Of a stretch of 64,000 nucleotides of DNA, positions 12,977-44,586 are shown piece by piece. The stretch lies in sequence record PQ464595.1; one strand, written 5' to 3'. Position 1 is the stretch's first letter. Every line of letters starts with the position of its first letter. A model generated the notes under the pieces. The model was not told the DNA's origin and searched no databases. It was given only the letters and a program-made list of their open reading frames with translations. Both the position numbers and the translations under genes were made by a program.

Positions 12977-14245
12977 TTAACGCCTTAAGTTTTTCACTAC
13001 GACGAAAGCATTACGACCACGCTGAAGGACAAAATGTTTTGAATCAATCATGTCCACATCTTCAGTGAAGACGTTCTCTTTAGTATCGTAGAATTCGTTT
13101 ACCTTGCGACCATTAATCTTGATCGCACCATTATTGATGAACTCACGTGCCATCTTACGAGAATCAGCTAAACCTGAATCTACCAGGATTGCTACTAAAT
13201 CGAGTGTAGTAGTTTGTTCCTGTACTTTGAATCCACTGCTGATCATCATATCAACTGCTTCATCGTTTAGTTCGACATTCTTACCAAAGAAGAAGTCCGA
13301 CAAAGCACGAGCAGTATCAGCCGCTGCTGAACCATGAACAAGTAAGGTCATAGCATATGCGAACTGTAACTTAACGAGATTTGGTTCACCGTTAGTCATT
13401 TCATTCACAATGTTTTCTACACTAAATGTAAATGGTTTGAAGTACTGGTACAGTTTAGGTACTTCAGTATCTTCAATGTTACGCCAGAACTGGAAGAAAT
13501 GGTACGGCGTAGTACGCTGACCCGTCATCCAGATAGTACCAGATTCTGATTTACCGAACTTAGTACCATCAGCTTTAGTAACCAGCGGAAGGGTGATAAC
13601 ACCACATTCAGCATCATTACCATGAAGCTTATGGATTAAGTCAGTACCAGCAATCATATTACCCCACTGGTCTGAACCACCGATTTGAATCTTACAATTC
13701 ATTTCAGTGTACAGGAATTCGAAATCCATTCCCTGAAGAATTGGGTATGCGAATTCAGTAAAGGAAATACCTTGGTCTGGTCGTTCAATACGAGAACGTA
13801 CTGACTCTTTGTTGATCATGTTATTCACGGTGAATGCTTTACCGTAATCACGAAGGAACGTAAGCATATTAATGTCACGCATCCAATCGAAGTTATTCAC
13901 GATTTCAACATCATCACCGAGAATAGAAGTGATGACAGTACTAATACCAGCGACGTTACGACTGATTGTATCCCAATCCATCATAGAACGTTCTTCTGAT
14001 TTGAAACTCGGATCACCAATGGAACCCGTAGCACCGCCAACCAGGGCAATAACTTTTACGCCGTGTTTCTTGAACACTTTCATTACGGACAGTGGCAGTA
14101 AGCTACCGATGTGTAATGAATCAGCAGTTGGATCAAAGCCACAATACACTGCTGAACCTTCGTCAAGTAATTTTGACAGTACTGTAATATCAGTACTTTG
14201 ATTAATCAAACCGCGATCTTGTAACTCTACCAATGCCGAATGCAT
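12977..14245 (-). CDS. tyrS: Tyrosyl-tRNA synthetase
   Basis: YCGFDPTADSLHIGS, FAYPILQGMD, QIGGSDQWGN, KFGKS, C-terminal S4 domain; start trimmed to MHSALV (SD AAGGTG). Confidence 0.97.
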   Translation of the reverse strand: MHSALVELQDRGLINQSTDITVLSKLLDEGSAVYCGFDPTADSLHIGSLLPLSVMKVFKKHGVKVIALVGGATGSIGDPSFKSEERSMMDWDTISRNVAGISTVITSILGDDVEIVNNFDWMRDINMLTFLRDYGKAFTVNNMINKESVRSRIERPDQGISFTEFAYPILQGMDFEFLYTEMNCKIQIGGSDQWGNMIAGTDLIHKLHGNDAECGVITLPLVTKADGTKFGKSESGTIWMTGQRTTPYHFFQFWRNIEDTEVPKLYQYFKPFTFSVENIVNEMTNGEPNLVKLQFAYAMTLLVHGSAAADTARALSDFFFGKNVELNDEAVDMMISSGFKVQEQTTTLDLVAILVDSGLADSRKMAREFINNGAIKINGRKVNEFYDTKENVFTEDVDMIDSKHFVLQRGRNAFVVVKNLRR

Positions 14246-14246
14246 G

Positions 14247-14531
14247 TTATTCACCTTTATCTTGTTCAATTACACCTAGAATACAATCTTCTGGCATAAT
14301 AAGAATATCTTCATTATCAATCTTTTCAGAATGAACTCGTTTATCACCTTCTACGTAAGTAACAATGTCACCCACGTTTAGTTCAGAGAGGAAACCTGGT
14401 CCAATTAGCAGTACTTCAGCGTGAGTACTTTCGTCTTCACCTGAAGCTGTAAGCAGAATACCGCCAGCACTCTTTGCTTCTTTCACCACTTTCTTAGCGA
14501 TAATATGATTATGAACTGGACGAAGTTTCAT
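14247..14531 (-). CDS. groES: Co-chaperonin GroES
   Basis: MKLRPVHNHII...SAGGILLT...EVLLIGPG...VGDIV...EDCILGVI. Confidence 0.92.
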   Translation of the reverse strand: MKLRPVHNHIIAKKVVKEAKSAGGILLTASGEDESTHAEVLLIGPGFLSELNVGDIVTYVEGDKRVHSEKIDNEDILIMPEDCILGVIEQDKGE

Positions 14532-17942: not shown

Positions 17943-17967
17943 AAAAAGGGGATACCAAGTATCCCCT
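17943..17967 (-). terminator. Rho-independent terminator after phoH
   Basis: GGGGATAC/GTATCCCC stem + U-tract. Confidence 0.8.
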
Positions 17968-17974
17968 AATGTTA

Positions 17975-19420
17975 TTATAGATTTTGTTCTGCGAATTCAG
18001 CAAGAACGGAACGTTGTACGCCCTCTAGCTCGATGATACGGCAACCTTCCCAATCTTTGAACTTCTCAGTTACATAAGTCAAACCTGAGTTGGTAGGACT
18101 GATGAACTTATTGTCAATCTGAGATAAGTTACCCATGATGATTACTTTACAGTTTTCACCAGCACGAGTTAGAATTGTTTTTGCCTGAGCAGGAGTAATG
18201 TTCTGGAATTCATCTACAATCAAGATTGTATTGATGAAACTACGACCACGAACAAAGTTCAATGCTTTGAATTGGAAGACATTACGTTTCATAATTTCTT
18301 CAATTGAACCTTGTGGGTTCGCATCATCTTTGTGTAGATACTCAAGGGCATCCACAGCAGCACCACAGAATGGCATTACTTTTTCTAGTTCTGAACCTGG
18401 CAAGAAGCCGATTTCTTCGAACTGAGAATCTTGAGTTTTAGAGAAAATAATACGGTCGTATTTCTTCTTCTCTAGTACTAATTCAAGAGCAGAAGCAACA
18501 GTGATCAACGTCTTACCAGTACCTGCTGGACCTAGTAGGATAGTTAGATGTACATCTTTATCCATGATAGAGTTGATAGCCATAGCTTGCTGAATGTTCT
18601 TGGCTTTAATTCCCCATACTTTACGAGATAGAGATTTATCAATACCTACGTCGCTGAAGCAAACCATATCACGATCATCATCGTGGTCAAGTACTGAAGC
18701 GAATCCTTCAAATACGAATAGACCATTAGTGTGATCATATACATAGTCACCGATACACAAATCAGCCGGAAGAATGTGTTTAACATTTTCTTCTGGAATC
18801 ATATGAATGAGTTTTGAGCCTTCCTGATTTGAATAAACTACATCACCAATCTCAGCCCAAAAATCTTCTACGTCCAATTCGTGATTGCCAGTATGGATTA
18901 GGTCTGAGTCCTCGATAGTTACATCGTGACGATAATCTTGTACTTCAACACCGTATGCCAGTGCTTTAATACGCATATTAATGTCGCGAGTTACGAGAAC
19001 CGCTTGTGAGAGTTTAGCAACGAGGATGATTTCATCATCTGGTACTGTACTTTTGAAAAGAGTTTCAAGCTTAGGATCGAAGCTATCAGATTCACCGATA
19101 TTTGGGTTCGCCAAATGCCAGATAGCTGTAAGTTCTTCGATGGTTAGTACGAATAGACGAGTATCTACGTTGATGTGGGGGTGGGTTTTAGAAATCTGAA
19201 CACCTTCAGTGCTGATTTCTTCGTGAGTTGCTGTTTCAAGGATAGTACTAATGTTGCGGATAGCAACACGAGCATCGCGTGAAATATCAACTTTACGACT
19301 CTTGATGGAATCTAATTCTTCCAGTACTTTGAACGGTAGAATTACATGTGAACCTTCGAACGCCAGGACTGCGTTAGGATCACCAAGAATCACGTTTGTG
19401 TCAAGAACATATTTTTTCAT
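17975..19420 (-). CDS. phoH: PIN domain + PhoH-like ATPase
   Basis: YVLDTNV (PIN), LVTRDINMRIKA, GPAGTGKT, RGRS, VDEFQN, TRAGENCK; start trimmed to MKKYVL. Confidence 0.93.
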   Translation of the reverse strand: MKKYVLDTNVILGDPNAVLAFEGSHVILPFKVLEELDSIKSRKVDISRDARVAIRNISTILETATHEEISTEGVQISKTHPHINVDTRLFVLTIEELTAIWHLANPNIGESDSFDPKLETLFKSTVPDDEIILVAKLSQAVLVTRDINMRIKALAYGVEVQDYRHDVTIEDSDLIHTGNHELDVEDFWAEIGDVVYSNQEGSKLIHMIPEENVKHILPADLCIGDYVYDHTNGLFVFEGFASVLDHDDDRDMVCFSDVGIDKSLSRKVWGIKAKNIQQAMAINSIMDKDVHLTILLGPAGTGKTLITVASALELVLEKKKYDRIIFSKTQDSQFEEIGFLPGSELEKVMPFCGAAVDALEYLHKDDANPQGSIEEIMKRNVFQFKALNFVRGRSFINTILIVDEFQNITPAQAKTILTRAGENCKVIIMGNLSQIDNKFISPTNSGLTYVTEKFKDWEGCRIIELEGVQRSVLAEFAEQNL

Positions 19421-19492
19421 AAACATCCTTTTTGTGTTTGTGTGTGGTAACACGTTTGTTTTCCTAACTGTATTTAATGCTCCAAAATACAG

Positions 19493-19795
19493 TTAGTTTT
19501 TGCTGGGTTCATAATCTACGTAGCAACGATTTCCTTTTGCTTCTTCGAACCAACATTCCTGATAAACCAGTTGTTCTAATGATACTGGTTTATCAGTTGT
19601 AGCATACTTTAATTCGCCATTTTTATCAGTGTATTGATAGGAACATGAACCGTCCTTACACTGGCCTAACGCAACAACTCGTCCGACGTTATAAGTAACG
19701 TTCTGGTGTTCAGTACTTTTTGTATTTTTGATAATGGAGACGAATCCCCATGTCAATATGGCAGAAAATATCAAACTCCAGATTAAACGTTTCAT
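19493..19795 (-). CDS. Membrane-anchored/exported Cys-containing protein
   Basis: N-terminal hydrophobic helix and four Cys. Confidence 0.65.
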   Translation of the reverse strand: MKRLIWSLIFSAILTWGFVSIIKNTKSTEHQNVTYNVGRVVALGQCKDGSCSYQYTDKNGELKYATTDKPVSLEQLVYQECWFEEAKGNRCYVDYEPSKN

Positions 19796-20700
19796 TATAG
19801 ACTCCGAATAAATTTAAATGCGTTATCCAAATAAGCAACGATATTCATCGCACCAATTGGATTAGCACTATGAACATGATATTCAAATGGTTTCCCAATC
19901 TGATTATCCATCATGTACTCGACTAAAAATTTGGCAAAGGTATAGCCAGTTTCTTCATCTTCATTTTCGGTATCACCTAAATCATGATCGAAAGAGATAA
20001 AGGACGGCAAACCATGTTCGTTGACGTAATAAACTGCTTCTTTATACGTTCGACAAACAACCATTTCTTCATTTGGATAGTACTTTTCAGCATCACGAAG
20101 ATCATCTAAGAACATCTTATATGAAGTTTCAGTTTTATCATCATCAACGTAGTCAATGAGAAGATTCTTTGAACGAACGAGCTTCATCAGTTCCATCTTA
20201 GCAGTACCAACAAAGTTTTGTTCTAAAAGAATGTTCCAACCACATTCAATCTTGTTACCCTTAAGGTAACGACACGTATGTAACAAGTTCACACCCGCAT
20301 TTTCAGCAGCGAAGTGTACACCATTATGTGCGTTATTACGAATGTCCAGAAGTTCTTCATAAGATACTTCTAAAGAAAACGCATGGTTGTGAGAACCGAT
20401 TACGGTATTTTTATAACTCACTAATGGCTGTAAACGATCCATCGGCAAATCATAATCAATTTCTTCTTTGGCTTCACGCATAACAGCGATTTCCAGACTC
20501 GGATCATCGTGTTCTACCATTCCACCTACTGCCCCCAGCAATCCATCGTAACGCAATTCTGACAGTACTAAACTCACGTTAGGAATGTCATTATACGGAT
20601 AGTTCGCATAAGGAGTACAGTTCTTCGCATAAATCCAGACGAACACACAATCATAACGTTCAGAACGTGTGCCGAATGGAATTTCTTGATACATAGCCAT
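19795..20700 (-). CDS. NUDT16-like Nudix hydrolase fused to a cyclic-phosphate-processing receiver-like domain
   Basis: LRYDGLLGAVGGMVE..SLEIAVMREAKEE Nudix box; C-terminal MFLDDLR...ISFDHDLG...TGY...HSANPIG. Confidence 0.8.
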   Translation of the reverse strand: MAMYQEIPFGTRSERYDCVFVWIYAKNCTPYANYPYNDIPNVSLVLSELRYDGLLGAVGGMVEHDDPSLEIAVMREAKEEIDYDLPMDRLQPLVSYKNTVIGSHNHAFSLEVSYEELLDIRNNAHNGVHFAAENAGVNLLHTCRYLKGNKIECGWNILLEQNFVGTAKMELMKLVRSKNLLIDYVDDDKTETSYKMFLDDLRDAEKYYPNEEMVVCRTYKEAVYYVNEHGLPSFISFDHDLGDTENEDEETGYTFAKFLVEYMMDNQIGKPFEYHVHSANPIGAMNIVAYLDNAFKFIRSL

Positions 20701-20702
20701 TT

Positions 20703-21494
20703 TTAGTAATCTTCTTCGTTATGTGACATGACTTCCATATGCTCATGGAGATACGCTTCAACCGTGTTGACTGCTTCGCTCATCGGCATATAAAGATTGT
20801 AATCAAACAGATCATCATTATCATGGGGTTCAGGATTCACGTTAATTACTAACGCAGGTGTTCCGATACCCATGTAAATGCTCCACGGAATAACTGTATC
20901 CGAAGAACCAATGACAACTACTACATCTTTAGACGTTAAGTTGTCGATGATTTCACCCATTTCACCATATACGGTTTTACGAACACCATCAGTGAAACGG
21001 AATACATCTCCGAACATTACGATGTTCGGTTTAGAAATAACCCCTGGTGTTGGAGTATGTTCAGTATAACCAATGTCACGAACTGAATAGTTCTGATCAT
21101 TAGTACTGTACGGTTCAACAACTTCAGTTAAGTAACCATGAACATGCATCGCTGTACCGCCAGCACGTTCAACAAGGTCATCAACATTCGCAGTGATGTG
21201 AATTACGTTTTCATCACCGTACATGCGTTCGATTTCGGCAATCATATGATGACCAATATTCGGTTCGTAGTTCTGTAAACCTACACGCATTTTGTTGAAG
21301 AAGTCGTGAATCATATGATAGTTCACGTTGAAGTTCGCAATATTACAAACCTGGTCAACATCTACCTGATCCCATAAGCCTTCTTCAGCGGCATCGCGGA
21401 ATGTATTAATACCAGACTCTTTAGATAGTCCAGCACCAGTACAGAAAACAATTCGTGGTGCACCTTTATTTTGGAGAAAGCGTTCGAGATTCAT
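20703..21494 (-). CDS. Sir2/sirtuin NAD-dependent deacylase
   Basis: GAGLSKESGINTFRD, ANVDDLVERAG, HVHG, KPNIVMFG, IGSS. Confidence 0.92.
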   Translation of the reverse strand: MNLERFLQNKGAPRIVFCTGAGLSKESGINTFRDAAEEGLWDQVDVDQVCNIANFNVNYHMIHDFFNKMRVGLQNYEPNIGHHMIAEIERMYGDENVIHITANVDDLVERAGGTAMHVHGYLTEVVEPYSTNDQNYSVRDIGYTEHTPTPGVISKPNIVMFGDVFRFTDGVRKTVYGEMGEIIDNLTSKDVVVVIGSSDTVIPWSIYMGIGTPALVINVNPEPHDNDDLFDYNLYMPMSEAVNTVEAYLHEHMEVMSHNEEDY

Positions 21495-21503
21495 TTATTG
21501 GCC

Positions 21504-21722
21504 TTATAAGTGAGAAAAATATAGTCGGCATCCACAGCTTGGACACTTCGGTTCTTTGATGTAATAGCCATCAGTCCCAGGAACTGTACGTGGAGCATCT
21601 TTGATTACATAAACATGGAAACAACGAGTACACGTAACTTTGTTATTCGCGGCTGGATGTTCATCAACCCATTTACCTGAGTACAGCTTTTTTAAGTGTG
21701 CTTCTAATTCTTCTTGAGTCAT
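21504..21722 (-). CDS. Small Zn-ribbon protein
   Basis: CTRC...CPSC. Confidence 0.7.
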   Translation of the reverse strand: MTQEELEAHLKKLYSGKWVDEHPAANNKVTCTRCFHVYVIKDAPRTVPGTDGYYIKEPKCPSCGCRLYFSHL

Positions 21723-21734
21723 GTTCGTTTTCCA

Positions 21735-22181
21735 TTAAACGGTGACTTTCAATTGCTCATTCCCAAAGGTTAATTCTTCGGGAAGAACCCCAAGATTAAA
21801 GACTAAATTGATCAAATCTTCATCTGTATCTTTTGGCTTATACACAATACTCATATGACATTTTAGATCATCGAATTTATGTTTAAACCCAGCATTGACT
21901 AATTCTTTATGGCGTTGTTGAATTTCGGGAGAATCTAGTAACAGTACTATAGCCTCCCATTCACCACCTGGCTTACCAAGTCGTTCAACACCAGTAATCT
22001 TTGCCGTATAAGTCTTATCATTCGAAAGTAAATCTATTTCAGGGTTACTTTCATCTTGCATCACTGTAACATGAAACTGCGAAGGTGTCAAGCAATCAAC
22101 ACCCGCTATTTTAAATAATTTTTGGATCTCTTTTGCCTGGTCAATATCCAGATCAAGACCCACGTATCCTTTTCCTGCCAT
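21735..22181 (-). CDS. acb1: 2H phosphoesterase, Acb1 / T4 gp57B-like anti-CBASS nuclease
   Basis: FHVTV and CHMSIVY 2H motifs; AIVLLLDSPEIQQRH..G.KHKFDD aligns with T4 gp57B from recall. Confidence 0.8.
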   Translation of the reverse strand: MAGKGYVGLDLDIDQAKEIQKLFKIAGVDCLTPSQFHVTVMQDESNPEIDLLSNDKTYTAKITGVERLGKPGGEWEAIVLLLDSPEIQQRHKELVNAGFKHKFDDLKCHMSIVYKPKDTDEDLINLVFNLGVLPEELTFGNEQLKVTV

Positions 22182-22190
22182 TATATATCC

Positions 22191-22388
22191 TTACATCGTT
22201 AAAATCAAGTATCCTAATACAAATAGGAACACACCTGCTATAACGAATAAGGCTACGCCAGAAAAGATATAAGCACCTTTCTTAAAGGTCATCGGAAGAC
22301 CCTTGAACTTCGATTTGTATTCCGAATAAGTTAGAAAACTAATAACGAAATACGCCAGTACTGATAGAAATAGCATGTATGTTAACAT
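22191..22388 (-). CDS. Small membrane protein
   Basis: Two hydrophobic segments. Confidence 0.65.
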   Translation of the reverse strand: MLTYMLFLSVLAYFVISFLTYSEYKSKFKGLPMTFKKGAYIFSGVALFVIAGVFLFVLGYLILTM

Positions 22389-22390
22389 AT

Positions 22391-23323
22391 TTAATATTCC
22401 CGTTCTTTGTCATCGCGGTACTTTTCAGCTAACTCAGCTACACTTTTATGAAAAGCAATGTGCGTATTGTAGTTAAATGATTGACCGCCAGTAATTGAAG
22501 GAACAACCTGAATATTCAATTGACGCAGATTAGTTTCAAATACCGACAACCCAATAATTTCTTCAGCATATACAAGGTAATCTTCGAGCTTCAACTCAAA
22601 TTTACGTTGTATGCCATGACGTTCAAGATGAACATCTTCATAAAATGGAAGTGGTGCTCGTCCAAATTCGATAACCATTTGAGCCATTGTTATTTCAGCC
22701 CAAATCTTTTCTTCCATTGTTTCTTCTTCTGGATTTTCAGCAATTACTTTTGCTTCATATTCAGCAATGAAAGTTTCATGATTAACAAAATAATCATAGT
22801 GTGGATGGTTACGAATTTCTTCAATCTGATCAGCAGTCTTTACAGTACCAGCATAATAAGTAAACTCTGAACTCAATGTTTCATAGATATGTTTATGTAC
22901 CGCATAAATGGTGACTGGTAATTGAATGAGATTTCCATCATAACCAGTGTAATTTACACTAATACCATCTTCCCAAATAATATCCTGAACATCGTCAAAT
23001 GTGAATGTCCAAGATTCAGGTTTATCCATATCTTCTTCCAGAAGAAAGTCTTCTTTATTAAGATTAGAACAAAGGAACTTGTTATACATTTCCCAAATTT
23101 CTTTGTTTCTTGTAGTTTCTTCTAACTTGTACTTACCATAATCATTATAGTAAGCAGCCATCGGAAGACCAACCAAATTATGGAAATGGTCGTTGTACAA
23201 GATTTTAGTACGGTTTATACCAGGAGATGCGATTGCTAACATTACAACAACTTCATCTTTTTCGCCGATAGGAAGTTGAGATACAGCACAAGATGTGTTA
23301 AAAGAACCCATTAATGTATCCAA
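22391..23323 (-). CDS. Hypothetical protein
   Basis: ORF track, 310 aa. Confidence 0.75.
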   Translation of the reverse strand: MDTLMGSFNTSCAVSQLPIGEKDEVVVMLAIASPGINRTKILYNDHFHNLVGLPMAAYYNDYGKYKLEETTRNKEIWEMYNKFLCSNLNKEDFLLEEDMDKPESWTFTFDDVQDIIWEDGISVNYTGYDGNLIQLPVTIYAVHKHIYETLSSEFTYYAGTVKTADQIEEIRNHPHYDYFVNHETFIAEYEAKVIAENPEEETMEEKIWAEITMAQMVIEFGRAPLPFYEDVHLERHGIQRKFELKLEDYLVYAEEIIGLSVFETNLRQLNIQVVPSITGGQSFNYNTHIAFHKSVAELAEKYRDDKEREY

Positions 23324-23547
23324 ATATAATAAATGGTTATAGCATAGTACGCACCGAAAGCAATAGTTGCCAGTACTGTTACTAAGTATAAACCGTATTG
23401 TGTTATTGTTTCTTTCCAGTTCCGAGGTCTAACGAATGCCATTAAACCACAACCAGCAAATAGATTCCAGAGTGCTGGAAATAGTACTGCTAAACCAAAT
23501 CCTACTGCCATAACTGTTAGGGCAACATCTTTGAGGAATTCTATCAT
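23311..23547 (-). CDS. Small membrane protein
   Basis: Two hydrophobic segments. Confidence 0.65.
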   Translation of the reverse strand: MIEFLKDVALTVMAVGFGLAVLFPALWNLFAGCGLMAFVRPRNWKETITQYGLYLVTVLATIAFGAYYAITIYYIWIH

Positions 23548-24044
23548 ACTAAAACCTCAATGTTATTATAATCGAATTTGATATATTTTGATTTTCCATT
23601 TTGAGAATATACCATATGTATATTATTTCCATCAGTATTAACTGATAGAACTCGGAAAGCACCAGATATTTTTTTACGAAGAGATTTAGATGGTTTAAAT
23701 TTCCAGGTTATACGCTGGGTATCACGATTAAATTCAATAACAGTACTGTACAAATTATTAGCTGCTAAGTTACCATGATTTTTACGTTCACTTTTTATAA
23801 AGCCAACAAAATCATGATATTCAAGATGTTGATTATGTAAAAACTCTTTTTTGAAGATTTTACTAGACCAGAATACACAATATGAAAGATGTGTATTACC
23901 AAAAATATCTTGGTATTTTTTCATCAATCCATCAACTTTTGGATTATCAAACCACATGTTTGCTAAAGCACAAGTGTTTCTTGAATAAAACTCTATAATA
24001 TTCATATGTGTTTCTCTCAATAAATTAAAAAGAAGGGAGAGCAA
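23544..24044 (-). CDS. Hypothetical protein (true start probably MNIIEF)
   Basis: ORF track. Confidence 0.65.
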   Translation of the reverse strand: MLSLLFNLLRETHMNIIEFYSRNTCALANMWFDNPKVDGLMKKYQDIFGNTHLSYCVFWSSKIFKKEFLHNQHLEYHDFVGFIKSERKNHGNLAANNLYSTVIEFNRDTQRITWKFKPSKSLRKKISGAFRVLSVNTDGNNIHMVYSQNGKSKYIKFDYNNIEVLV

Positions 24045-24055
24045 TTGCTCTCCCT
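24027..24055 (-). terminator. Terminator after NAMPT
   Basis: AGGGAGAGC/GCTCTCCCT stem + U-tract. Confidence 0.8.
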
Positions 24056-24060
24056 AAGTA

Positions 24061-25575
24061 TTACAAACCTTTGTTCGCACGTTCACGGACTTCATCGAAG
24101 TTACTGAGATTGAAAATCTCACCGTTAATGTACATATCAACCATCATATCTTTAAGGAAGTGGTTGATTTCCTGAAGCTCAATGCGTTCAGCAATGATCT
24201 TGTGGGAATTTGTACACTCATAAGTGGTCACACGACCGCGAAGTGAACGTTTACCCACATCAGTAATTGGGTCTTTGAACAGATCTTCCCAAGTACCATC
24301 AGCCAATTGCTGAGCAGAACCTTTCATTGCGAATGAATAGGTATCGCGACCTTTTTCTGGATGAACCAGTTTACCACCCATACCGAACACAAGGTTCTCA
24401 ATGGAGTAGTTCTTAGCTTCCAGGTTCGCAACGATTTGGCGAATGCTGTCTTCGTTGATACCATCACCCTGAATTACGCCGATGAAACTTGGAAGTACTT
24501 TAAAGCCATTAGCATTCACAGTAGTTCCGAATTTGTCTGCCAGAATATCCAGGATCTCAATTGGCATAGTAGTAGCATCACCACTATCTGGACGCATGAC
24601 GAGACGAGCACCAGGGCAACGTGCCGCGATTTCAAGGATCATCTCTTTCAGACGAGTGCCAATGAATTCACGAACGAAGCGGTAAGCATCATACGTATCA
24701 ATTACTACTGAAACGATTGGTGGAACACCAACTGAACCTTTAGCAAGGTACGCATTAACTTTTTTCTCCCACAGGCGAACCATTTTCAAAGCCATATTAA
24801 AATCGTCGCGTTTGTCTGCGTCAGAGTTAGAGCAAGTAGCACTATGCTCAGAAGCAGTTACGGAACTCAGATATGCTTTATCAGTGTGGAAGTACTTTTT
24901 AATGTAACGGTTCGCAGACAGACAATCAGAACCACTGAAGATCATTGCGTGAGACATACCCGCCAGAATCGCTGATTCATAGCTGGAAGCACCGCGATCA
25001 CCGAAGTTGTGAAGATGGTAGTCCACGAAGCGATGCCCCGCATGACGTTCCATAGTGTCTGCCAAAAACTCTTTAATGCTACGTGCATTACTTGCTACAG
25101 TAGTAGGGAACCACACAGCACGTTGTAACTGAGTCTCGATATAACTTGCGATAACGCAAACACGAGGATCAGTACTGAAAGAACGTACCAGAGGGCAACC
25201 AACCGGAACTACAGTACCTTCAGGAACAGCACGGATATGTACCGGAATTTTACCGCCGTGTACTTCCAGAATATGTTCCCAAAAACCGCGATCAAAATCA
25301 TCGCCACGTTGTTCGGTTTCAAGTTCTGCTTCATCAATATCTTCAATTGTGATAGTGATGTTCAAGTACTTCTGAATGTAGTATTGAAGACCAGCCATTA
25401 CAACATGCGTTGCGTATTTTGATGGTTTACGAGCGATGATGTTACTTTCAAGAGCTACTACGCCCTCTTTCATCATGAAGCCGTGACCAGTTTTATACGA
25501 GTCAACGTTGAGGATAAAGTTTACGTTATCAGAGAAATCAATAACGTCATTAAAAGTTTTGTTAGTAATAGTCAT
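24061..25575 (-). CDS. nadV: Nicotinamide phosphoribosyltransferase
   Basis: ILNVDSYKTGH, LHNFGDRG, ASEHS, VVIDTYD, MRPDSGD, IQGDGIN, VFGMGG, KDPITD. Confidence 0.95.
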   Translation of the reverse strand: MTITNKTFNDVIDFSDNVNFILNVDSYKTGHGFMMKEGVVALESNIIARKPSKYATHVVMAGLQYYIQKYLNITITIEDIDEAELETEQRGDDFDRGFWEHILEVHGGKIPVHIRAVPEGTVVPVGCPLVRSFSTDPRVCVIASYIETQLQRAVWFPTTVASNARSIKEFLADTMERHAGHRFVDYHLHNFGDRGASSYESAILAGMSHAMIFSGSDCLSANRYIKKYFHTDKAYLSSVTASEHSATCSNSDADKRDDFNMALKMVRLWEKKVNAYLAKGSVGVPPIVSVVIDTYDAYRFVREFIGTRLKEMILEIAARCPGARLVMRPDSGDATTMPIEILDILADKFGTTVNANGFKVLPSFIGVIQGDGINEDSIRQIVANLEAKNYSIENLVFGMGGKLVHPEKGRDTYSFAMKGSAQQLADGTWEDLFKDPITDVGKRSLRGRVTTYECTNSHKIIAERIELQEINHFLKDMMVDMYINGEIFNLSNFDEVRERANKGL

Positions 25576-26169: not shown

Positions 26170-26194
26170 AAAATGGAGTACCTTTCAGTACTCC
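26170..26194 (-). terminator. Terminator after NadM-Nudix
   Basis: GGAGTAC/GTACTCC stem + U-tract. Confidence 0.7.
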
Positions 26195-26201
26195 AAAACT
26201 C

Positions 26202-27329
26202 TTACAAAATGCCAAGGAAAGTATCAATGATACTCAAATGGTCTTCAAAGAATTTATCACGGTTCTTGACCAACTCACCAAGCGGCATCCAGAATGCTTT
26301 TTCAGCATCATCAGAACCTTTTACTTTTGGTAAAGTATTGTCCTGAAGCTGGATATGAGCACAGCGAGTAATGATACGCCAACGAAGTGAACGGTTGAAA
26401 TCACCGAATTCCATACTTTCACGGATTGAACCTTCCAGTACTTTCATCGGAACATCAATCTTCGTTTCTTCTTTGAGTTCACGAAGTGCCGTTTGAACCT
26501 GATCTTTGTCTTGCCATGCGTCGAAGAACCCGCCAGGAAGTGCGTATAAACCTTTACCTGGGAAAGTACGACGCTTAACCAACAGTACGTGTCCAGCACA
26601 AATTACCAGAGCATCACCCGTCAGGAACGGAATGTTGTCATATGGCAGTTTTTCTTTCATCTCTGAACGATAACGTTGTACGAAGTTGAATTCGCCGATC
26701 AGGTTATCGAACACCATTGGTTTGGTCTTCATGAACTTCTCAAGAAACTCTTTAGTTTCTTCCGGCAATTCTTCTGGTACTTGTTTAGTACTGAAAAACT
26801 GCTGGCGAACAGCGGTACTGTTAAATGTTACTTTTACAGTAATATCGCGATGTTCAACATAATCTTTATGATTATAGTCATCTGACACAGTTTTGGTTAC
26901 AGTTTGTTCTGGAATAAAATCCTGATTCCACTGCGGGAAGAAGTTCAGGTAGAAAGTACTTGCGTCAGCTTCTTTCTGACAACCAGTAATGAAAATGTTT
27001 TCACTCTGAGTTACAGATTGAACTTGCTCGTGTACTTCCATCAGCCATTTGCTGTTGTTATATACGTAGTCGTGGATTGGAAGGATGTTAACCTTCACTG
27101 AACGCCCTTTAGCCCATTCTGCTTGTGCTAAACGACTAGACATAGCATCCAGTACTTGCTTGCGTTCATCGAACGTGAACGGATTCTTTGAATCACGTGC
27201 CATGTCGGAAGAACCAACCAGGATTACCAAACGGTCTGAATTTTCTAATGCGTGTTTAATGGTAGCTTCATGACCAGCATGTGCCATTTGGAAACGACCA
27301 ATATATACATAAACTTTTTCGTTTTTCAT
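26202..27329 (-). CDS. nadM: Bifunctional NMN adenylyltransferase / ADP-ribose Nudix hydrolase (NadM-Nudix, NatV-like)
   Basis: YIGRFQMAHAGH, KNPFTFDER, FNSTAVR, ALPGGF..ALRELKEET, GSDDAEKAFW; start trimmed to MKNEKV. Confidence 0.95.
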   Translation of the reverse strand: MKNEKVYVYIGRFQMAHAGHEATIKHALENSDRLVILVGSSDMARDSKNPFTFDERKQVLDAMSSRLAQAEWAKGRSVKVNILPIHDYVYNNSKWLMEVHEQVQSVTQSENIFITGCQKEADASTFYLNFFPQWNQDFIPEQTVTKTVSDDYNHKDYVEHRDITVKVTFNSTAVRQQFFSTKQVPEELPEETKEFLEKFMKTKPMVFDNLIGEFNFVQRYRSEMKEKLPYDNIPFLTGDALVICAGHVLLVKRRTFPGKGLYALPGGFFDAWQDKDQVQTALRELKEETKIDVPMKVLEGSIRESMEFGDFNRSLRWRIITRCAHIQLQDNTLPKVKGSDDAEKAFWMPLGELVKNRDKFFEDHLSIIDTFLGIL

Positions 27330-42299: not shown

Positions 42300-42965
42300 A
42301 TGGATTATCAAAAAATTTACAATAACTTAATGCTAAAACGTAAAACAGTACTGTTAGAAAATCAGTATACTGAAAGTCATCATATTGTACCTAAATGCTT
42401 AGGTGGTGGCAATGAAAAAGATAATCTGGTTAATTTAACACCAGAAGAACACTTTCTAGCACATCAGTTGTTGGTTAAGATTTATCCAGAACATAAAGGA
42501 TTAAAATATGCTTTATACCTAATGACTATATCACCATCAGGTAAAAGAAATAATAATAAACTCTATGGTTGGATTAAGCGAGACTATCAATCAAATAGAG
42601 CAACATCATCTGGATTTACGGGAAGAACACATAAACCGGAAACTATAGCTAAAATGAAAGAAGCTCGTGCTAAACAGGTGATCACTGAAGAAACTAAACA
42701 AAAAATTAGCAGTACTAAGACTGGTGTCAAATTAACACAAGAAGCTAAAGATTCATTAAATGAAAAACGTCGAAATCATCCAACTTGGTTAGAGTCACAT
42801 CGAAATAAATCAGTTTCTGAAGAAGCTAAAGCTAAGATTAGTGCGGCTAATAATGGTAGAATTTTTCCAGAAAAGACGTGTCCACATTGCTTAAAAAATG
42901 GAGCAGGTCCGAATATGACCCGCTACCATTTTGATAATTGTAAGTTTAAAAATCTCCAGGGTTAA
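42300..42965 (+). mobile_element. Free-standing HNH homing endonuclease with NUMOD3-like repeats
   Basis: ESHHIVPKCLGGGNEKDNLVNLTPEEHFLAH; HKPETIAKMK/TEETKQKIS repeats; C-terminal CPHC; opposite strand; CATAAATA at 42270. Confidence 0.9.
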
Positions 42966-43872
42966 CCTGATAAACTTTCAAACCCAGCAGCTTACGCCAC
43001 ATATCTACTACTTTCGTGCGGTCGTCGAAGACTTTCTTCACATCGAACTTGTCAAAGACATGGTTCATGTACAGTTCGTACTTCACAATGTCGTCCGAGC
43101 GGCTATCTTCAGCACCACGCATGAAGATATGATCGTATGGAATACCGTACTTCTGTAACCATGCTTCAGTATCTTCTTGACAGGTTTCGTGACGACCACT
43201 CATGATGATCACAGTACGACCAAGATAGTTCTTCTCTGCCAGTACTGACAGAATTACTTCTGCGTCTGGATCATCAACAGATACTTTCTTTTCTTCGTAT
43301 GGACCACGTTTGCCGTTCATGTGAGCCAAAGTACCGTCAATATCAACAACGATGGCTTCAGGAAGATCAGTATTCGTCGGTACTGGAGCCGTGAAAGCAC
43401 TGTAGAAGTACTTTTCTGCCATACCGTCGATCACTTCTTCCGGTACTGATTTTTCACGCAGCAGGTTACGTTCTTTACACAGTTTAACATACTCCTTAAC
43501 TGCGAAGAACTCATGTACGAAAGTTTTACCTTTCTTGAATTCTTCAAAGAAGTTTTGTTCTTTGTAAGTGTAACCGTGCTCTTTGGCGAACTCTTTCCAC
43601 TTCTCACGAACGGAAGGGTTCAGGCCAGTGTCGCCAACAATGATGTTCCACTTGTTAGCAGCCGCATGTACCGCAGCACTGTACTGAGCGTTTTGCACGT
43701 ACTGTTCGTTGTCTTTGCGGAACTTGTAGTTACTATGGGAACCAGCCATTGTCTGACGAATGTCATCAAGGTTTACAATAACAGTCTTTGACCGTGCTGA
43801 TTTCACTTGTTCATTCGCCCAGGTGGTCTTACCGCATCCCGGCAACCCGATTGTTACTGTTACTTGTGGCAT
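42946..43872 (-). CDS. pseT: Polynucleotide 5'-kinase / 3'-phosphatase
   Basis: TIGLPGCGKTT, NLDDIR, VDIDGTLA (HAD DxD), VFDDR. Confidence 0.95.
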   Translation of the reverse strand: MPQVTVTIGLPGCGKTTWANEQVKSARSKTVIVNLDDIRQTMAGSHSNYKFRKDNEQYVQNAQYSAAVHAAANKWNIIVGDTGLNPSVREKWKEFAKEHGYTYKEQNFFEEFKKGKTFVHEFFAVKEYVKLCKERNLLREKSVPEEVIDGMAEKYFYSAFTAPVPTNTDLPEAIVVDIDGTLAHMNGKRGPYEEKKVSVDDPDAEVILSVLAEKNYLGRTVIIMSGRHETCQEDTEAWLQKYGIPYDHIFMRGAEDSRSDDIVKYELYMNHVFDKFDVKKVFDDRTKVVDMWRKLLGLKVYQVNPGDF

Positions 43873-44086
43873 TTTCTTTTCCTATTCCAAATTTATCAGA
43901 GAATTTTTTCAGTACATTTTCGGACAAACGAATGCTCGCCGTATCCTCACGTGAACTGTATTTCAACGGTGTCCATTCTAATCCACTTGAATCGAGAAAG
44001 TCAAGCCCACGGAAGTAATCTTTTAACGAATTAAATTTGATTACGGTCATATCCTGGACGATGCTATGTTGCACTTGTACTTTCAT
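43829..44086 (-). CDS. Hypothetical protein
   Basis: ORF track; SD AGGAG. Confidence 0.65.
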   Translation of the reverse strand: MKVQVQHSIVQDMTVIKFNSLKDYFRGLDFLDSSGLEWTPLKYSSREDTASIRLSENVLKKFSDKFGIGKENATSNSNNRVAGMR

Positions 44087-44097
44087 GGGATTCTCCT

Positions 44098-44322
44098 TTA
44101 GATTATAATGTACTTGTCATGGTACTTCATCGTCAGATTGAAGAAAGCTCCCTCGTCGAAGTAGAACTCTCCATCGACAATAAAGGCCACGTCACCTATA
44201 TTTCTTACATATTCAAGCATCTGTCGCATAGTGTATGTCGGCAGTGCTGTATTTGGGATAACTGAAAATTCCTGATCTCGGTATACTACTTTAGACGTTT
44301 GTAATGTTACTTGATTACTCAC
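44098..44322 (-). CDS. Hypothetical protein
   Basis: ORF track. Confidence 0.6.
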   Translation of the reverse strand: MSNQVTLQTSKVVYRDQEFSVIPNTALPTYTMRQMLEYVRNIGDVAFIVDGEFYFDEGAFFNLTMKYHDKYIII

Positions 44323-44554
44323 GAGCGTATCTTCCTAAATCATAAATTTTTGGTTTTTTGTTTTTGGGCTTACGATCCTTCTTATACGCAGATGAACTAA
44401 CTCCAAAAGTATTTTTAAGACGCTTAGCAGATTTCTGAACCCCTTTCCTTGAGCGTTCAGACTGTACAGCGTCTATCTCTTGTAGTATTCTTCTATGTTC
44501 TTCAGGAGTTCGTACTTCGCCCTTTGTTGCTTTATACTTTGGTTTAGCCATCAC
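44315..44554 (-). CDS. Small basic hypothetical protein
   Basis: ORF track; SD AAGGAG. Confidence 0.65.
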   Translation of the reverse strand: MMAKPKYKATKGEVRTPEEHRRILQEIDAVQSERSRKGVQKSAKRLKNTFGVSSSAYKKDRKPKNKKPKIYDLGRYARE

Positions 44555-44586
44555 TACTCCTTGTGGTAGGCTATTTAGAAGTACTG

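What the first reader, a model, noticed from the sequence alone, without database searches (positions are those of the whole stretch)
19795..20700. Phage protein with a full-length NUDT16 (U8 decapping)-like domain fused to a receiver-like phosphatase
Seen and recalled: the N-terminal 180 aa align along their length with animal NUDT16. Examples (phage vs NUDT16): LRYDGLLGAVGGMVE vs MRFDGRLGFPGGFVD; SLEIAVMREAKEE vs SLEDGLNRELREE; LLEQNFVGTAKMEL vs FLENSFIGSAREQL. The C-terminus has FLDD-R, SFDHDLG and HSANP of the cyclic-phosphate-processing receiver family. Established: NUDT16 decaps RNA and trims ADP-ribose from modified substrates, leaving phosphoribose. Inference: a two-step eraser of ADP-ribosyl marks or NAD caps, directly adjacent to Sir2.
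Basis: partly seen in the sequence, partly recalled or inferred. Interest (0 to 1): 0.7.

Follow-up and report, generated by a model that had tools for sequence, protein, structure and literature searches.

The report
Phage NUDT16-like Nudix fused to cREC
A jumbo Erwinia phage gene really does fuse a NUDT16-type Nudix pyrophosphatase to a receiver-like "cREC" phosphoesterase next to a sirtuin. This fusion and its gene neighbourhood were already described by comparative genomics in 2021-2022, and its chemistry has still not been tested.

Summary
Window 19795-20700 (minus strand) is a 301-aa ORF of Erwinia phage Kaldavass. Residues ~1-186 are a full-length, catalytically intact member of the Nudt16-like Nudix family (Pfam E 1e-15). 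Human NUDT16 is the best PDB match by sequence (E 1e-8) and by fold (E 2e-13, TM 0.8). Residues ~194-296 are a cREC domain (Pfam E 2e-23) with all family-invariant motifs and a four-unit receiver fold.

The gene lies in a tightly packed co-directional run between two terminator-like hairpins: 2H/Acb1-like, Zn-binding protein, Sir2, Nudix-cREC, small membrane protein, PIN-PhoH. This run sits beside NAMPT and NadM. Related jumbo phages carry the two halves as adjacent genes.

An NAD/ADP-ribose role is plausible. An "eraser of ADP-ribosyl marks or NAD caps" is no better supported than the published prediction (Iyer et al. 2021, 2022), in which Nudix and cREC process ADP-ribose derivatives made by the phage sirtuin during NAD-dependent RNA repair. 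That work describes this neighbourhood and the fused gene in Serratia phage BF, a 76%-identical orthologue. The architecture is therefore already known, and no experimental study was found. The nearest relatives are phage proteins, not animal NUDT16.

The parts
19795..20700 (-). Nudix-cREC fusion gene, 301 aa (stop codon 19795-19797)
   Evidence: ORF list. Identical to the Kaldavass CDS annotated 'nudix hydrolase'. Two Pfam domains. PHROG 9999 plus PHROG 1479.
20143..20700 (-). Nudt16-like Nudix domain, aa 1-186
   Evidence: Pfam PF22327 E 1.3e-15 over the full profile. PDB phmmer hits NUDT16 at 1.3e-8. Foldseek top 39 hits are NUDT16, X29 or TIRR. R50, G56, G59, E76, E79, E80 and E133 are conserved in at least 148 of 150 family representatives.
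20458..20535 (-). Nudix box, aa 56-81 (G56, G59, G60 ... R75, E76, E79, E80)
   Evidence: Aligned to the NUDT16 Nudix box. Invariant in alignments A1, A2 and A4. Roles of the human residues come from PMC4485890 and PMC6459841.
20122..20142 (-). Short linker, aa 187-193. It corresponds to the stop codon and intergenic spacer of the split versions.
   Evidence: pLDDT below 50 at aa 188-192. The split Nudix proteins end here. PBECO4 has a TAG plus 9 nt in the same frame at this point.
19813..20121 (-). cREC (cyclic-phosphate-processing receiver-like) domain, aa 194-296
   Evidence: Pfam PF20274 E 1.9e-23. Invariant D199, D200, R202, S236-F-D-H-D-L241, H277-S-A-N280, G283 and N286 (domain numbering plus 186). 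Domain model pLDDT 90. VIA-align top hits are receiver domains, Z 9.4-7.7, about 88 residues aligned. Foldseek also finds REC domains, weakly.
20703..21494 (-). Sir2 (CobB-like sirtuin without zinc-ribbon cysteines), immediately upstream
   Evidence: Pfam SIR2 E 1.4e-22. PHROG 2162. The best PDB matches are CobB-type deacylases, E 2e-20, with the catalytic HG motif kept and the Cys-rich segment replaced.
21504..21722 (-). Small phage zinc-binding protein
   Evidence: Pfam Phage_zn_bind_2 E 6e-23.
21735..22181 (-). 2H phosphoesterase, Acb1-like
   Evidence: Pfam Acb1 E 2.3e-15 and 2_5_RNA_ligase2 E 6e-5. PHROG 755.
19493..19795 (-). Conserved 100-aa membrane protein; its start overlaps the fusion gene's stop
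   Evidence: PHROG 14661 E 8e-45. Occupies the same position in RaK2 and PBECO4.
17975..19453 (-). PIN-PhoH (nuclease plus P-loop ATPase), last gene of the unit
   Evidence: Pfam PIN_4 E 1.4e-21 plus PhoH E 3e-44. Same position in RaK2, PBECO4 and L007.
17947..17967 (-). Terminator-like hairpin just after PIN-PhoH
   Evidence: 9-bp stem with 5 G-C pairs and a T-run. Terminator-like sites are enriched in this region: 20 found against 6.8 expected.
24034..24055 (-). Terminator-like hairpin just after NAMPT, the upstream boundary of the unit
   Evidence: 9-bp stem with 6 G-C pairs and a T-run.
24061..25575 (-). Nicotinamide phosphoribosyltransferase (NAMPT), neighbouring NAD+ salvage
   Evidence: Pfam NAMPT_N plus NAPRTase. 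GenBank annotation.
26202..27329 (-). NadM-type NMN adenylyltransferase fused to a second, generic Nudix domain
   Evidence: Pfam CTP_transf_like plus NUDIX.

Best explanation
The gene encodes a bifunctional enzyme that most likely breaks down the ADP-ribose-derived by-product made when the upstream phage sirtuin consumes NAD+.

Proposed roles:
- The NUDT16-type Nudix half cuts the ADP-ribose pyrophosphate bond and releases AMP. In human NUDT16 this fold holds the adenosine and leaves the distal ribose exposed, so it tolerates a substituent there.
- The cREC half is a receiver-fold enzyme with an Asp/His active site. It would open or remove the phosphate ester on the distal ribose.
- The most likely substrate is ADP-ribose 1'',2''-cyclic phosphate or ADP-ribose 1''-phosphate, if the sirtuin acts as a KptA/Tpt1-like RNA 2'-phosphotransferase as proposed by Iyer et al. 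2022. Otherwise it would be O-acyl-ADP-ribose or ADP-ribose.
- The products would be mononucleotide and ribose phosphates, next to the phage's NAMPT/NadM NAD+ salvage genes.

Shown here: domain identities, intact catalytic residues, gene fusion and fission between related phages, conserved gene order, the terminator-bounded unit, and the RNA-end-repair context of cREC in other phages.

Inferred: the substrates, the order of the two steps, and the sirtuin's activity.
For: - Both domains are high-confidence family members with all catalytic or invariant residues.
- The two halves are separate adjacent genes in RaK2, K64-1, PBECO4 and a 47%-identical metagenomic phage, and are fused in the GAP32/CBB/BF/fHe-Yen9-04/Kaldavass clade. 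In PBECO4 a single in-frame stop separates them. This is the classic sign of a shared pathway.
- The order Sir2, Nudix, cREC, membrane protein, PIN-PhoH is conserved with overlapping or abutting stops and starts across these phages. NAMPT and NadM lie nearby in Kaldavass, RaK2 and L007 (not PBECO4), and the 2H gene is also there in Kaldavass and L007.
- In the window the unit is bounded by strong terminator-like hairpins.
- Another Nudt16-like gene sits inside a NAPRTase/NMNAT/NAD-synthase operon. This links the microbial branch of the family to NAD metabolism.
- In rV5 the run Rnl1, cREC, Sir2 is equally tight, so the cREC-sirtuin link recurs in an unrelated phage.
- Human NUDT16 binds ADPr with the distal ribose exposed (PMC6459841).
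- The prediction was published independently for this neighbourhood (PMC9503650 section 3.7.3 and PMC7824862).
- The phage already has a generic ADPRase-type Nudix in NadM, which suggests the Nudt16-like enzyme has a different, substituted substrate.
Against: - No cREC, phage sirtuin of this clade or phage Nudt16-like enzyme has been assayed.
- The sirtuin is most similar to CobB-type deacylases. Nothing here shows RNA 2'-phosphotransferase activity.
- Among 67 IMG/VR cREC loci, only the 7 jumbo-clade loci have a Sir2 within 10 kb. cREC therefore does not depend on a sirtuin in general, and its core activity may be on RNA ends rather than on ADPr derivatives.
- The operon also holds a 2H enzyme that could do the cyclic-phosphate step itself.
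- The inter-domain geometry of the model is uncertain (pTM 0.61).
Confidence: 0.42

Rival explanations
1. It is an RNA-end processing enzyme. The Nudix half would remove a 5' NDP-X group from RNA (NAD cap, 5'-triphosphate or 5'-adenylate). The cREC half would heal a 2',3'-cyclic or 3'/2'-phosphate end. It would work with PIN-PhoH and with the phage's Pnk and RNA ligase in RNA repair or programmed RNA decay. This covers the reader's 'NAD cap' idea.
For: - Mammalian NUDT16 removes m7G, NAD, FAD and dpCoA caps (PMC7337524 abstract, listed; the NUDT16-FAD complex 6x7u is the top PDB sequence hit).
- An unbiased Pfam census of genes flanking 40 non-jumbo cREC loci is led by metallophosphoesterases, ATP-dependent ligases, RNA ligase, RtcB, CCA-adding enzyme and Pnkp-type HAD.
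- rV5 has Rnl1, cREC, Sir2 in a row. Aeromonas phage CC2 has cREC next to a CCA-adding enzyme and an HD protein.
- PIN-PhoH is the last gene of the same unit.
- Pnk and an Rnl1-type ligase are encoded about 23 kb away.
Against: - It does not explain the strict coupling to Sir2 and the neighbouring NAD salvage genes in the jumbo clade.
- Anticodon-nuclease damage leaves a 5'-OH end, which a Nudix cannot heal.
- No RNA-binding module is evident.
Confidence: 0.22
2. This is the first reader's main idea: a two-step eraser of macromolecular ADP-ribosylation. Targets could be DarT-modified DNA, CmdT-modified RNA or ADP-ribosylated proteins. The Nudix half would trim ADPr to phosphoribose and cREC would remove the remnant.
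For: - Human NUDT16 processes protein-linked mono- and poly-ADPr, because the distal ribose is solvent-exposed (PMC6459841).
- The phage domain keeps the fold and the catalytic residues.
- The gene cluster is centred on NAD and ADP-ribose.
Against: - After Nudix cleavage a phosphoribosyl adduct remains. A phosphomonoesterase would leave a ribosyl adduct, so the mark is not erased.
- No macro, ARH or NADAR partner is in the operon.
- PADLOC gives no hit.
- cREC contexts are RNA-end enzymes, not ADP-ribosyltransferases.
- The gene's fixed partner is a phage sirtuin, not a host-toxin-related gene.
Confidence: 0.1
3. It is a counter-defence enzyme that destroys ADPR-based or cyclic-nucleotide immune signals, such as Thoeris 2'/3'cADPR, His-ADPR, N7-cADPR or CBASS/type III signals. 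The Nudix half would cut the pyrophosphate and cREC a phosphodiester.
For: - Iyer et al. 2021 raise cADPr processing as one possibility for cREC.
- An Acb1-family 2H enzyme is in the same unit.
- Phages are now known to degrade cADPR isomers and feed the product into NAD+ synthesis, using an unrelated RyR-domain enzyme (PMC13232231).
Against: - It does not explain the conserved sirtuin and PIN-PhoH partners.
- No experimental link was found between any Nudix or cREC and Thoeris evasion.
- PADLOC and PHROG give no anti-defence label.
Confidence: 0.1
4. It is a nucleotide-pool house-cleaner. Like NUDT16 it would hydrolyse (d)IDP/(d)ITP or similar non-canonical nucleotides, and cREC would dephosphorylate the product. 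The Sir2 adjacency would be incidental.
For: - Human NUDT16 is an IDP/ITP-preferring enzyme (PMC4485890).
- One family representative is fused to a Ham1/ITPase domain.
- The surrounding region has many nucleotide-metabolism genes.
Against: - Q170, which hydrogen-bonds to the base in NUDT16 (N1 of hypoxanthine; the adenine amine in the ADPr complex), is Glu in the phage protein and in 124 of 150 family representatives. The GFP motif is GAV in the phage protein.
- The conserved translationally coupled order with Sir2 across divergent phages argues against incidental adjacency.
Confidence: 0.05

Closest known systems
Nudix-cREC fusion of Serratia phage BF and its sirtuin/2H/Nudix/cREC/PIN neighbourhood (Iyer, Burroughs, Anand, de Souza, Aravind 2021 and 2022; PMC7824862, PMC9503650)
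   Same: It is an orthologue: 76% amino-acid identity over the full length. It has the same two domains, the same neighbours (Sir2, 2H, PIN-PhoH) and belongs to the same jumbo-phage group.
   Different: Only the host and phage differ (Erwinia phage Kaldavass). Those papers did not place the Nudix half in the NUDT16 family. They assign most phage Nudix domains to T4 NudE-like or NadM-like clades.
Human NUDT16 and Xenopus X29 (U8 snoRNA-decapping enzyme; (d)IDP/ITPase; ADPr, PAR, NAD-cap and FAD-cap hydrolase)
   Same: Same fold over the whole domain (TM by target about 0.8). Same Pfam family. Identical R50, D52, G59, E76, E79 and E80, with phage E133 matching human E136. An aromatic stacking residue is kept at the H24 position, as F20.
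   Different: Only 22-25% identity. Human Q170 corresponds to phage E170, F57 to A57, F61 to M61 and D132 to H129. The phage protein is fused to cREC and sits in a phage operon. It is not the sister group of animal NUDT16 in the tree.
Receiver (REC/CheY-like) domains of two-component systems
   Same: The cREC model superposes on beta1-alpha4 of receiver domains (Z 9.4-7.7, about 88 residues, rmsd 2.1-2.9). Acidic residues sit at the ends of beta1 and beta3, as in REC.
   Different: It has four beta-alpha units, so the REC beta5-alpha5 unit is absent and with it the place where REC carries its conserved lysine. It has extra invariant His residues (DHD and HSAN motifs). It is never found with histidine kinases (PMC7824862). 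It is mostly viral.
Yeast Tpt1, Cpd1 (2H) and Poa1 (macro) pathway for ADP-ribose 1'',2''-cyclic phosphate (from my own knowledge of the tRNA-splicing literature)
   Same: It is a functional analogy. An NAD+-consuming transferase is followed by a cyclic phosphodiesterase, a phosphatase and finally a Nudix ADPRase. The operon offers one candidate for each step: Sir2, 2H, cREC and the Nudt16-like domain.
   Different: None of the phage proteins except the 2H enzyme is homologous to its yeast counterpart. The activities are untested.
T4 polynucleotide kinase-phosphatase (Pnkp)
   Same: It is an analogy only: one polypeptide joins two end-processing or phosphate-processing activities, one of them an Asp-based phosphoesterase of Rossmann-like fold.
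   Different: No homology. Pnkp has a kinase, not a Nudix. Kaldavass has its own Pnk elsewhere.
NadM-type NMNAT-Nudix of the NARP2 NAD+ reconstitution pathway
   Same: It is a phage Nudix fused to a second enzyme in the same NAD gene cluster.
   Different: It is a different Nudix clade (generic PF00293 only, no Nudt16-like match) with a different partner domain. It is a separate gene at 26202-27329.

Membership tests
Nudt16-like Nudix family (Pfam PF22327) | Full-length match to the family profile above the curated threshold | tested here: met
   58.1 bits against a cut-off of 27, over profile positions 2-161 of 161. All 150 best relatives are also PF22327.
Nudt16-like Nudix family (Pfam PF22327) | NUDT16-type fold, including the N-terminal extension and C-terminal helix | tested here: met
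   The Foldseek top 39 PDB hits are all NUDT16, X29 or TIRR, with TM by target 0.7-0.83. There is a 1000-fold E-value gap to the next Nudix.
Nudt16-like Nudix family (Pfam PF22327) | Catalytic and metal- or phosphate-binding residues (R50, D52, G59, E76, E79, E80, E136 in human numbering) | tested here: met
   All are present, with E136 as E133. Roles come from PMC4485890 and PMC6459841.
Animal NUDT16 orthologue group (U8 decapping / IDPase) | Base-recognition residues H24, F57 (GFP motif) and Q170, and clustering with animal sequences | tested here: not met
   The phage protein has F20 at the H24 column, A57 (GAV) and E170. Animal-type rows rank 65th or lower of 162 by path distance, and the jumbo-phage rows form their own clade.
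Animal NUDT16 orthologue group (U8 decapping / IDPase) | Decapping, IDPase or ADPr hydrolase activity | not testable with these tools
   This needs enzyme assays.
cREC domain (Pfam PF20274; Iyer et al. 2021) | Full-length match to the family profile above threshold | tested here: met
   83.4 bits against a cut-off of 27, over profile positions 1-88 of 88. Atlas nearest clusters are 100% cREC_REC.
cREC domain (Pfam PF20274; Iyer et al. 2021) | Conserved acidic/His motifs (DD.R after beta1, SFDHDLG after beta3, HSAN after beta4) | tested here: met
   These are the invariant columns in 21 diverse cREC sequences, and all are present in the query.
cREC domain (Pfam PF20274; Iyer et al. 2021) | Receiver-like Rossmannoid fold | tested here: met
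   VIA-align: 49 of the top 50 entries carry a receiver (REC) domain, Z 9.4-7.7. Foldseek gives REC domains at E 3e-3 to 0.1. Atlas structural neighbours are REC domains, TM 0.6-0.67.
cREC domain (Pfam PF20274; Iyer et al. 2021) | Context: no histidine kinase; linked to NAD/ADPr or RNA-repair genes | tested here: met
   Seen with Sir2, 2H and PIN-PhoH in the window, with Rnl1 and Sir2 in rV5, and with ligases, RtcB, CCA-adding enzyme, Pnkp-HAD and metallophosphoesterases elsewhere. No HisKA or HATPase appears among the 25 most frequent of 44 neighbour families (the rest were not displayed) or in the contexts.
cREC domain (Pfam PF20274; Iyer et al. 2021) | Cyclic-phosphate phosphodiesterase or phosphatase activity | not testable with these tools
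   The activity is only predicted in the literature. No solved structure matches by sequence.
Sirtuin-centred phage neighbourhood type 1 (PMC9503650, section 3.7.3) | [quoted passage not shown] | tested here: met
   All five components lie at 17975-22181 on one strand. The arrangement is conserved in RaK2, PBECO4, L007 and five IMG/VR jumbo contigs.
Two-component response-regulator receiver | Five-unit fold with the conserved beta5 lysine, a partner histidine kinase and an output domain | tested here: not met
   The model has four beta-alpha units and aligns only to REC residues about 1-100. No kinase is in the context. The partner domain is an enzyme, a Nudix.
NARP2 NAD+ reconstitution pathway | The two-gene set NAMPT plus NMNAT | tested here: not met
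   NAMPT and NadM are present 3.4-6.6 kb upstream. The target gene is neither of them, so it is a neighbour and not a member.

The most novel reading that the evidence does not exclude
The fusion closes an NAD+ recycling loop.
1. The phage sirtuin consumes NAD+ as a Tpt1-like transferase and gives nicotinamide plus ADP-ribose 1'',2''-cyclic phosphate.
2. The NUDT16-like half splits this product into AMP and 5-phosphoribosyl 1,2-cyclic phosphate.
3. The cREC half opens the cyclic phosphate to ribose 1,5-bisphosphate.
4. Host ribose-1,5-bisphosphate kinase turns that into PRPP.
5. The adjacent NAMPT and NadM rebuild NAD+ from PRPP and nicotinamide.

This would be a third chemical route for phage NAD+ reconstitution and the first enzymology for the cREC domain. 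The PRcP to ribose-1,5-bisphosphate to PRPP steps are recalled from the C-P lyase pathway literature. They were not tested here.
Probability: 0.1. Interest if true: 0.7.

Novelty: already known. Interest (0 to 1): 0.38.

Why it matters
The cREC domain is mostly found in phages (at least 579 loci in IMG/VR), and no member has ever been assayed or solved. The phage sirtuin family next to it occurs in about 1000 sequenced phages, including T5-like and rV5-like phages, and its function is also untested.

The fused Nudix-cREC protein is a convenient single polypeptide for working out what these NAD-linked phage modules do. The candidates are RNA repair, NAD+ recycling and counter-defence. Its NUDT16-type fold suggests a substrate with a substituted distal ribose.

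For this scan, the finding is a correct reading of the sequence that rediscovers a published, still untested, comparative-genomics prediction.

Tried and rejected
1. Scan of bacterial and archaeal genomes for relatives of the Nudix half. The first scan used patterns specific to the jumbo clade and found nothing. So I could not measure how common the family is in cellular genomes. The Atlas does show a Campylobacterota cluster as well as viral and animal clusters.
2. I expected the animal-type (Q170) sequences to form one clade sister to the phage group. In the quick tree the smallest split holding all 17 has 92 leaves. Only the 8 rows with H at the H24 column look animal-type. I make no claim about donor or direction of transfer.
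3. I first equated human H24 with phage Y24 from collinear numbering. The 150-sequence alignment shows that H24 aligns with F20.
4. I tested whether cREC is generally tied to Sir2. In 67 IMG/VR cREC loci only the 7 jumbo-clade loci have Sir2 within 10 kb. My Sir2 model was built from enterobacterial phage sequences and may miss distant sirtuins.
5. Sequence search of the cREC half against the PDB found nothing at E up to 10.
6. PADLOC gave no hit for the target or for Sir2, and NCBIfam gave none for the target.
7. Literature searches for experimental work on cREC, phage sirtuins, or a phage Nudix acting on Thoeris signals found none.
8. Public runs hold near-identical phage DNA, but there is no infection transcriptome, so expression timing was not examined.
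9. Promoter-like hits are not enriched (44 found against 39.8 expected) and were not used.
10. A suspected paralogue array at the window's 3' end is not one.
Full report
**What is there.** The window is the last 64 kb of Erwinia phage Kaldavass. This is a 366.6-kb jumbo phage (PQ464595.1) related to GAP32, CBB, XbC2, Serratia phage BF and Yersinia phage fHe-Yen9-04. The finding's coordinates, 19795-20700 on the minus strand, are one 301-aa ORF. GenBank annotates it as 'nudix hydrolase' and starts it two codons further in. Homologues keep the longer N-terminus.

**The N-terminal half is a NUDT16-family Nudix domain.**
- Pfam Nudt16-like (PF22327) matches aa 18-181 across the whole profile (E 1.3e-15, 58 bits against a cut-off of 27). 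The generic NUDIX model covers only the Nudix box.
- A phmmer search of every PDB sequence returns only NUDT16, Xenopus X29 and NUDT16L1/TIRR.
- A profile of 14 phage homologues raises this to E 4e-12. The next Nudix appears at 1.5e-3, over the Nudix box alone.
- An AlphaFold2 model (mean pLDDT 86) gives 39 NUDT16, X29 or TIRR chains as its best Foldseek matches (E 2e-13 to 5e-10, TM by target 0.7-0.83). An unrelated CoA pyrophosphatase follows at 3.6e-7.
- An exhaustive profile search of 1.84 billion representatives finds only 559 relatives at E up to 1e-3. All of the best 150 are Pfam Nudt16-like. Named ones include tick and horsehair-worm U8 snoRNA-decapping enzyme-like proteins.

**Residues.**
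- The residues that bind metal and phosphate in human NUDT16 are R50, D52, G59, E76, E79, E80 and E136 (PMC4485890, PMC6459841). All are present in the phage protein, with E136 as E133. All except D52 are conserved in at least 148 of 150 family representatives (R50, G59, E76 and E80 are invariant); D52 is D in 135 of 150.
- The purine-stacking H24 aligns with phage F20. That column is F in 137 rows and H in only the 8 animal-type rows.
- Q170, which hydrogen-bonds the base in NUDT16, is E170 in the phage and in 124 of 150 representatives. The GFP motif is GAV.
- I read this as an active pyrophosphatase of the NUDT16 fold whose base pocket is not that of the animal IDP-preferring enzyme. Any preference for adenine is an inference only.

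**Phylogeny.** In a quick maximum-likelihood tree of 163 domains, the jumbo-phage proteins form their own group (SH-aLRT 75). Their nearest neighbours are metagenomic proteins. The five whose contigs I inspected are phage-like or lie in an NAD operon. Animal-type sequences are distant, ranking 65th or lower of 162 by path distance. Atlas clusters of the family are viral, Campylobacterota, arthropod and chordate. So the domain is 'NUDT16-like' as a family statement, not an animal-derived orthologue.

**The C-terminal half is a cREC domain.**
- Pfam cREC_REC (PF20274) matches aa 194-293 over the full profile (E 1.9e-23).
In protein numbering these are D199, D200, R202; S236 to L241 (SFDHDL); H277 to N280 (HSAN); plus G283 and N286.
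- No PDB sequence matches it.
- A domain model (pLDDT 90) has four beta-alpha units. It superposes on beta1-alpha4 of receiver domains: 49 of the top 50 VIA-align entries carry a REC domain, Z 9.4-7.7, about 88 residues aligned. Foldseek and the Atlas agree more weakly.
- The domain was named by Iyer et al. 2021, who noted that it never accompanies histidine kinases and predicted cyclic-phosphate or cADPr processing (PMC7824862). The 2022 paper says it remains experimentally uncharacterised.

**Context.**
- The gene lies in a co-directional run between two strong terminator-like hairpins, at 24034-24055 after NAMPT and at 17947-17967 after PIN-PhoH.
- The last six genes of that run are an Acb1-family 2H phosphoesterase (21735-22181), a zinc-binding protein (21504-21722), Sir2 (20703-21494), the fusion gene, a 100-aa membrane protein (19493-19795) and PIN-PhoH (17975-19453). 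Four uncharacterised ORFs (22191-24044) lie between NAMPT's terminator and the 2H gene.
- Sir2's stop codon is 2 nt from the fusion gene's ATG.
- Upstream are NAMPT and a NadM-type NMNAT-Nudix, the NARP2-type NAD+ salvage pair (pathway named in PMC13464706).
- Pnk and an Rnl1-type RNA ligase lie about 23 kb away.
- The Sir2 is most like CobB-type deacylases (E 2e-20 over the full length, catalytic HG kept), but the zinc-ribbon cysteines are absent. Its family occurs in 1001 phage records.

**Fusion and fission.**
- The protein is fused in the GAP32/CBB/BF/fHe-Yen9-04/Kaldavass clade.
- It is two adjacent genes in RaK2, K64-1, PBECO4-like phages and a 47%-identical metagenomic phage. The order is always Sir2, Nudix, cREC, (membrane protein), PIN-PhoH.
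- In PBECO4 the two ORFs are in the same frame, separated by TAG plus 9 nt that carry a GGAG. One stop codon is therefore the difference between split and fused.
- This is good evidence that the two activities serve one pathway.

**What cREC associates with elsewhere.**
- In rV5 I verified the tight run Rnl1, cREC, Sir2.
- In Aeromonas phage CC2, cREC sits beside a CCA-adding enzyme and an HD protein.
- IMG/VR holds at least 579 cREC loci. Among 67 of the best 80, only the 7 jumbo-clade loci have Sir2 within 10 kb.
- I ran a Pfam census of 63 larger same-strand neighbours from 40 dereplicated loci. It is led by metallophosphoesterases (5), ATP-dependent ligase domains (3), RNA ligase (2), CCA-adding/poly(A) polymerase (2), RtcB (1) and Pnkp-type HAD (1).
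- The general theme is nucleic-acid end processing. The sirtuin link is specific to some lineages.
- Separately, one Nudt16-like gene lies inside a NAPRTase/NMNAT/NAD-synthase operon. This ties that Nudix family to NAD metabolism in microbes.

**Prior knowledge.** Iyer et al. [quoted passage not shown] They propose that the sirtuin acts like KptA/Tpt1 to remove RNA 2'-phosphates. The 2H, cREC and Nudix enzymes would then either resolve cyclic phosphates or process the resulting ADPr cyclic phosphate. The BF protein is 76% identical to the Kaldavass one. I found no experimental follow-up. The architecture is therefore already known as a prediction. What this analysis adds:
- the firm NUDT16-family placement of the Nudix half
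- the residue map onto human NUDT16
- the one-stop-codon fusion/fission
- the terminator-bounded unit
- an independent census of cREC contexts

**Mechanism.**
- My preferred reading (confidence about 0.4) is that the fusion dismantles the ADP-ribose derivative left by the sirtuin's NAD+ consumption. The Nudix half releases AMP. It uses a fold that, in human NUDT16, holds the adenosine and leaves the distal ribose free for a substituent. The cREC half opens or removes the ribose phosphate.
- This maps one-to-one onto the yeast Tpt1, Cpd1, Poa1, ADPRase sequence (recalled knowledge). It also explains why the phage carries a second Nudix besides NadM.
- The main rival (about 0.2) is direct RNA-end processing: 5' NAD, ppp or App removal plus 3' cyclic-phosphate healing. 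It is favoured by the cREC contexts and the PIN-PhoH partner, but it does not explain the sirtuin coupling.
It also has no supporting partner genes.
- Destruction of immune signals (about 0.1) and nucleotide-pool cleaning (about 0.05) remain possible.
- All substrate assignments are inferences. Only assays can decide.

**Verdict.** The finding is already known as a computational prediction. Interest is moderate-to-low for novelty, but it is a good, compact target for the first biochemistry of cREC and of phage sirtuin modules.

Noticed in passing
window 24061-25575 and 26202-27329 (minus strand): NAMPT and a NadM-type NMNAT-Nudix, the NARP2-type phage NAD+ reconstitution pair. Each is followed by a strong terminator-like hairpin (24034-24055 and 26174-26195).
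   Followed up: partly
window 21735-22181 (minus strand): A 148-aa 2H phosphoesterase that matches the Pfam anti-CBASS Acb1 family (E 2.3e-15) and is annotated 'RNA ligase' in GenBank. It could be a cyclic-nucleotide degrader or the cyclic phosphodiesterase of the sirtuin module.
   Followed up: partly
window 20703-21494 (minus strand): The phage Sir2 aligns over its full length with CobB-type deacylases and keeps the catalytic His. It has no cysteines where the zinc ribbon should be. Relatives occur in about 1000 phage records, including T5-like, rV5-like and Vibrio phages.
   Followed up: partly
L005:7541-7555 (Escherichia phage PBECO4): [quoted passage not shown] A single stop codon distinguishes the split form from the fused form.
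   Followed up: yes
L006:3798-8837 (metagenomic contig of 888 kb): A 278-aa Nudt16-like protein sits between NAPRTase, NMNAT and a glutamine-dependent NAD synthase, as if it were part of an NAD biosynthesis operon.
   Followed up: partly
Proteins among P0060-P0208: One Nudt16-like representative is fused to a Ham1/ITPase domain, two carry HD_4 domains and one carries ankyrin repeats. None of the other 149 representatives is fused to cREC.
   Followed up: no
window about 42300-45735 (minus strand, from GenBank annotation): Polynucleotide kinase and an Rnl1-type RNA ligase ('RNA ligase and tail fiber attachment catalyst'), with a homing endonuclease on the opposite strand beside them. This is the phage's classical RNA-repair pair.
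   Followed up: no
window 12977-14531 (minus strand, from GenBank annotation): A phage-encoded tyrosyl-tRNA synthetase followed by a GroES-like co-chaperonin.
   Followed up: no
window 20694-20700 and 19420-19453: GenBank starts the fusion gene two codons downstream of the first ATG, and starts PIN-PhoH 11 codons downstream of the first GTG. Homologues support the longer N-terminus for the fusion gene.
   Followed up: partly
window 19795-21494: Near-identical DNA (0.8-0.95 of sampled words) is present in food, food-production, phyllosphere, silage and freshwater metagenome runs. This phage lineage is therefore common on plant-associated material.
   Followed up: no
L017:1810-2370 (Aeromonas phage PX29 'nudE'): A standalone Nudt16-like Nudix lies in the early region of a T4-like Aeromonas phage, between rIIB and an ndd-like gene, with no Sir2 or cREC nearby. 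The gene named nudE there is not a generic Nudix.
   Followed up: partly
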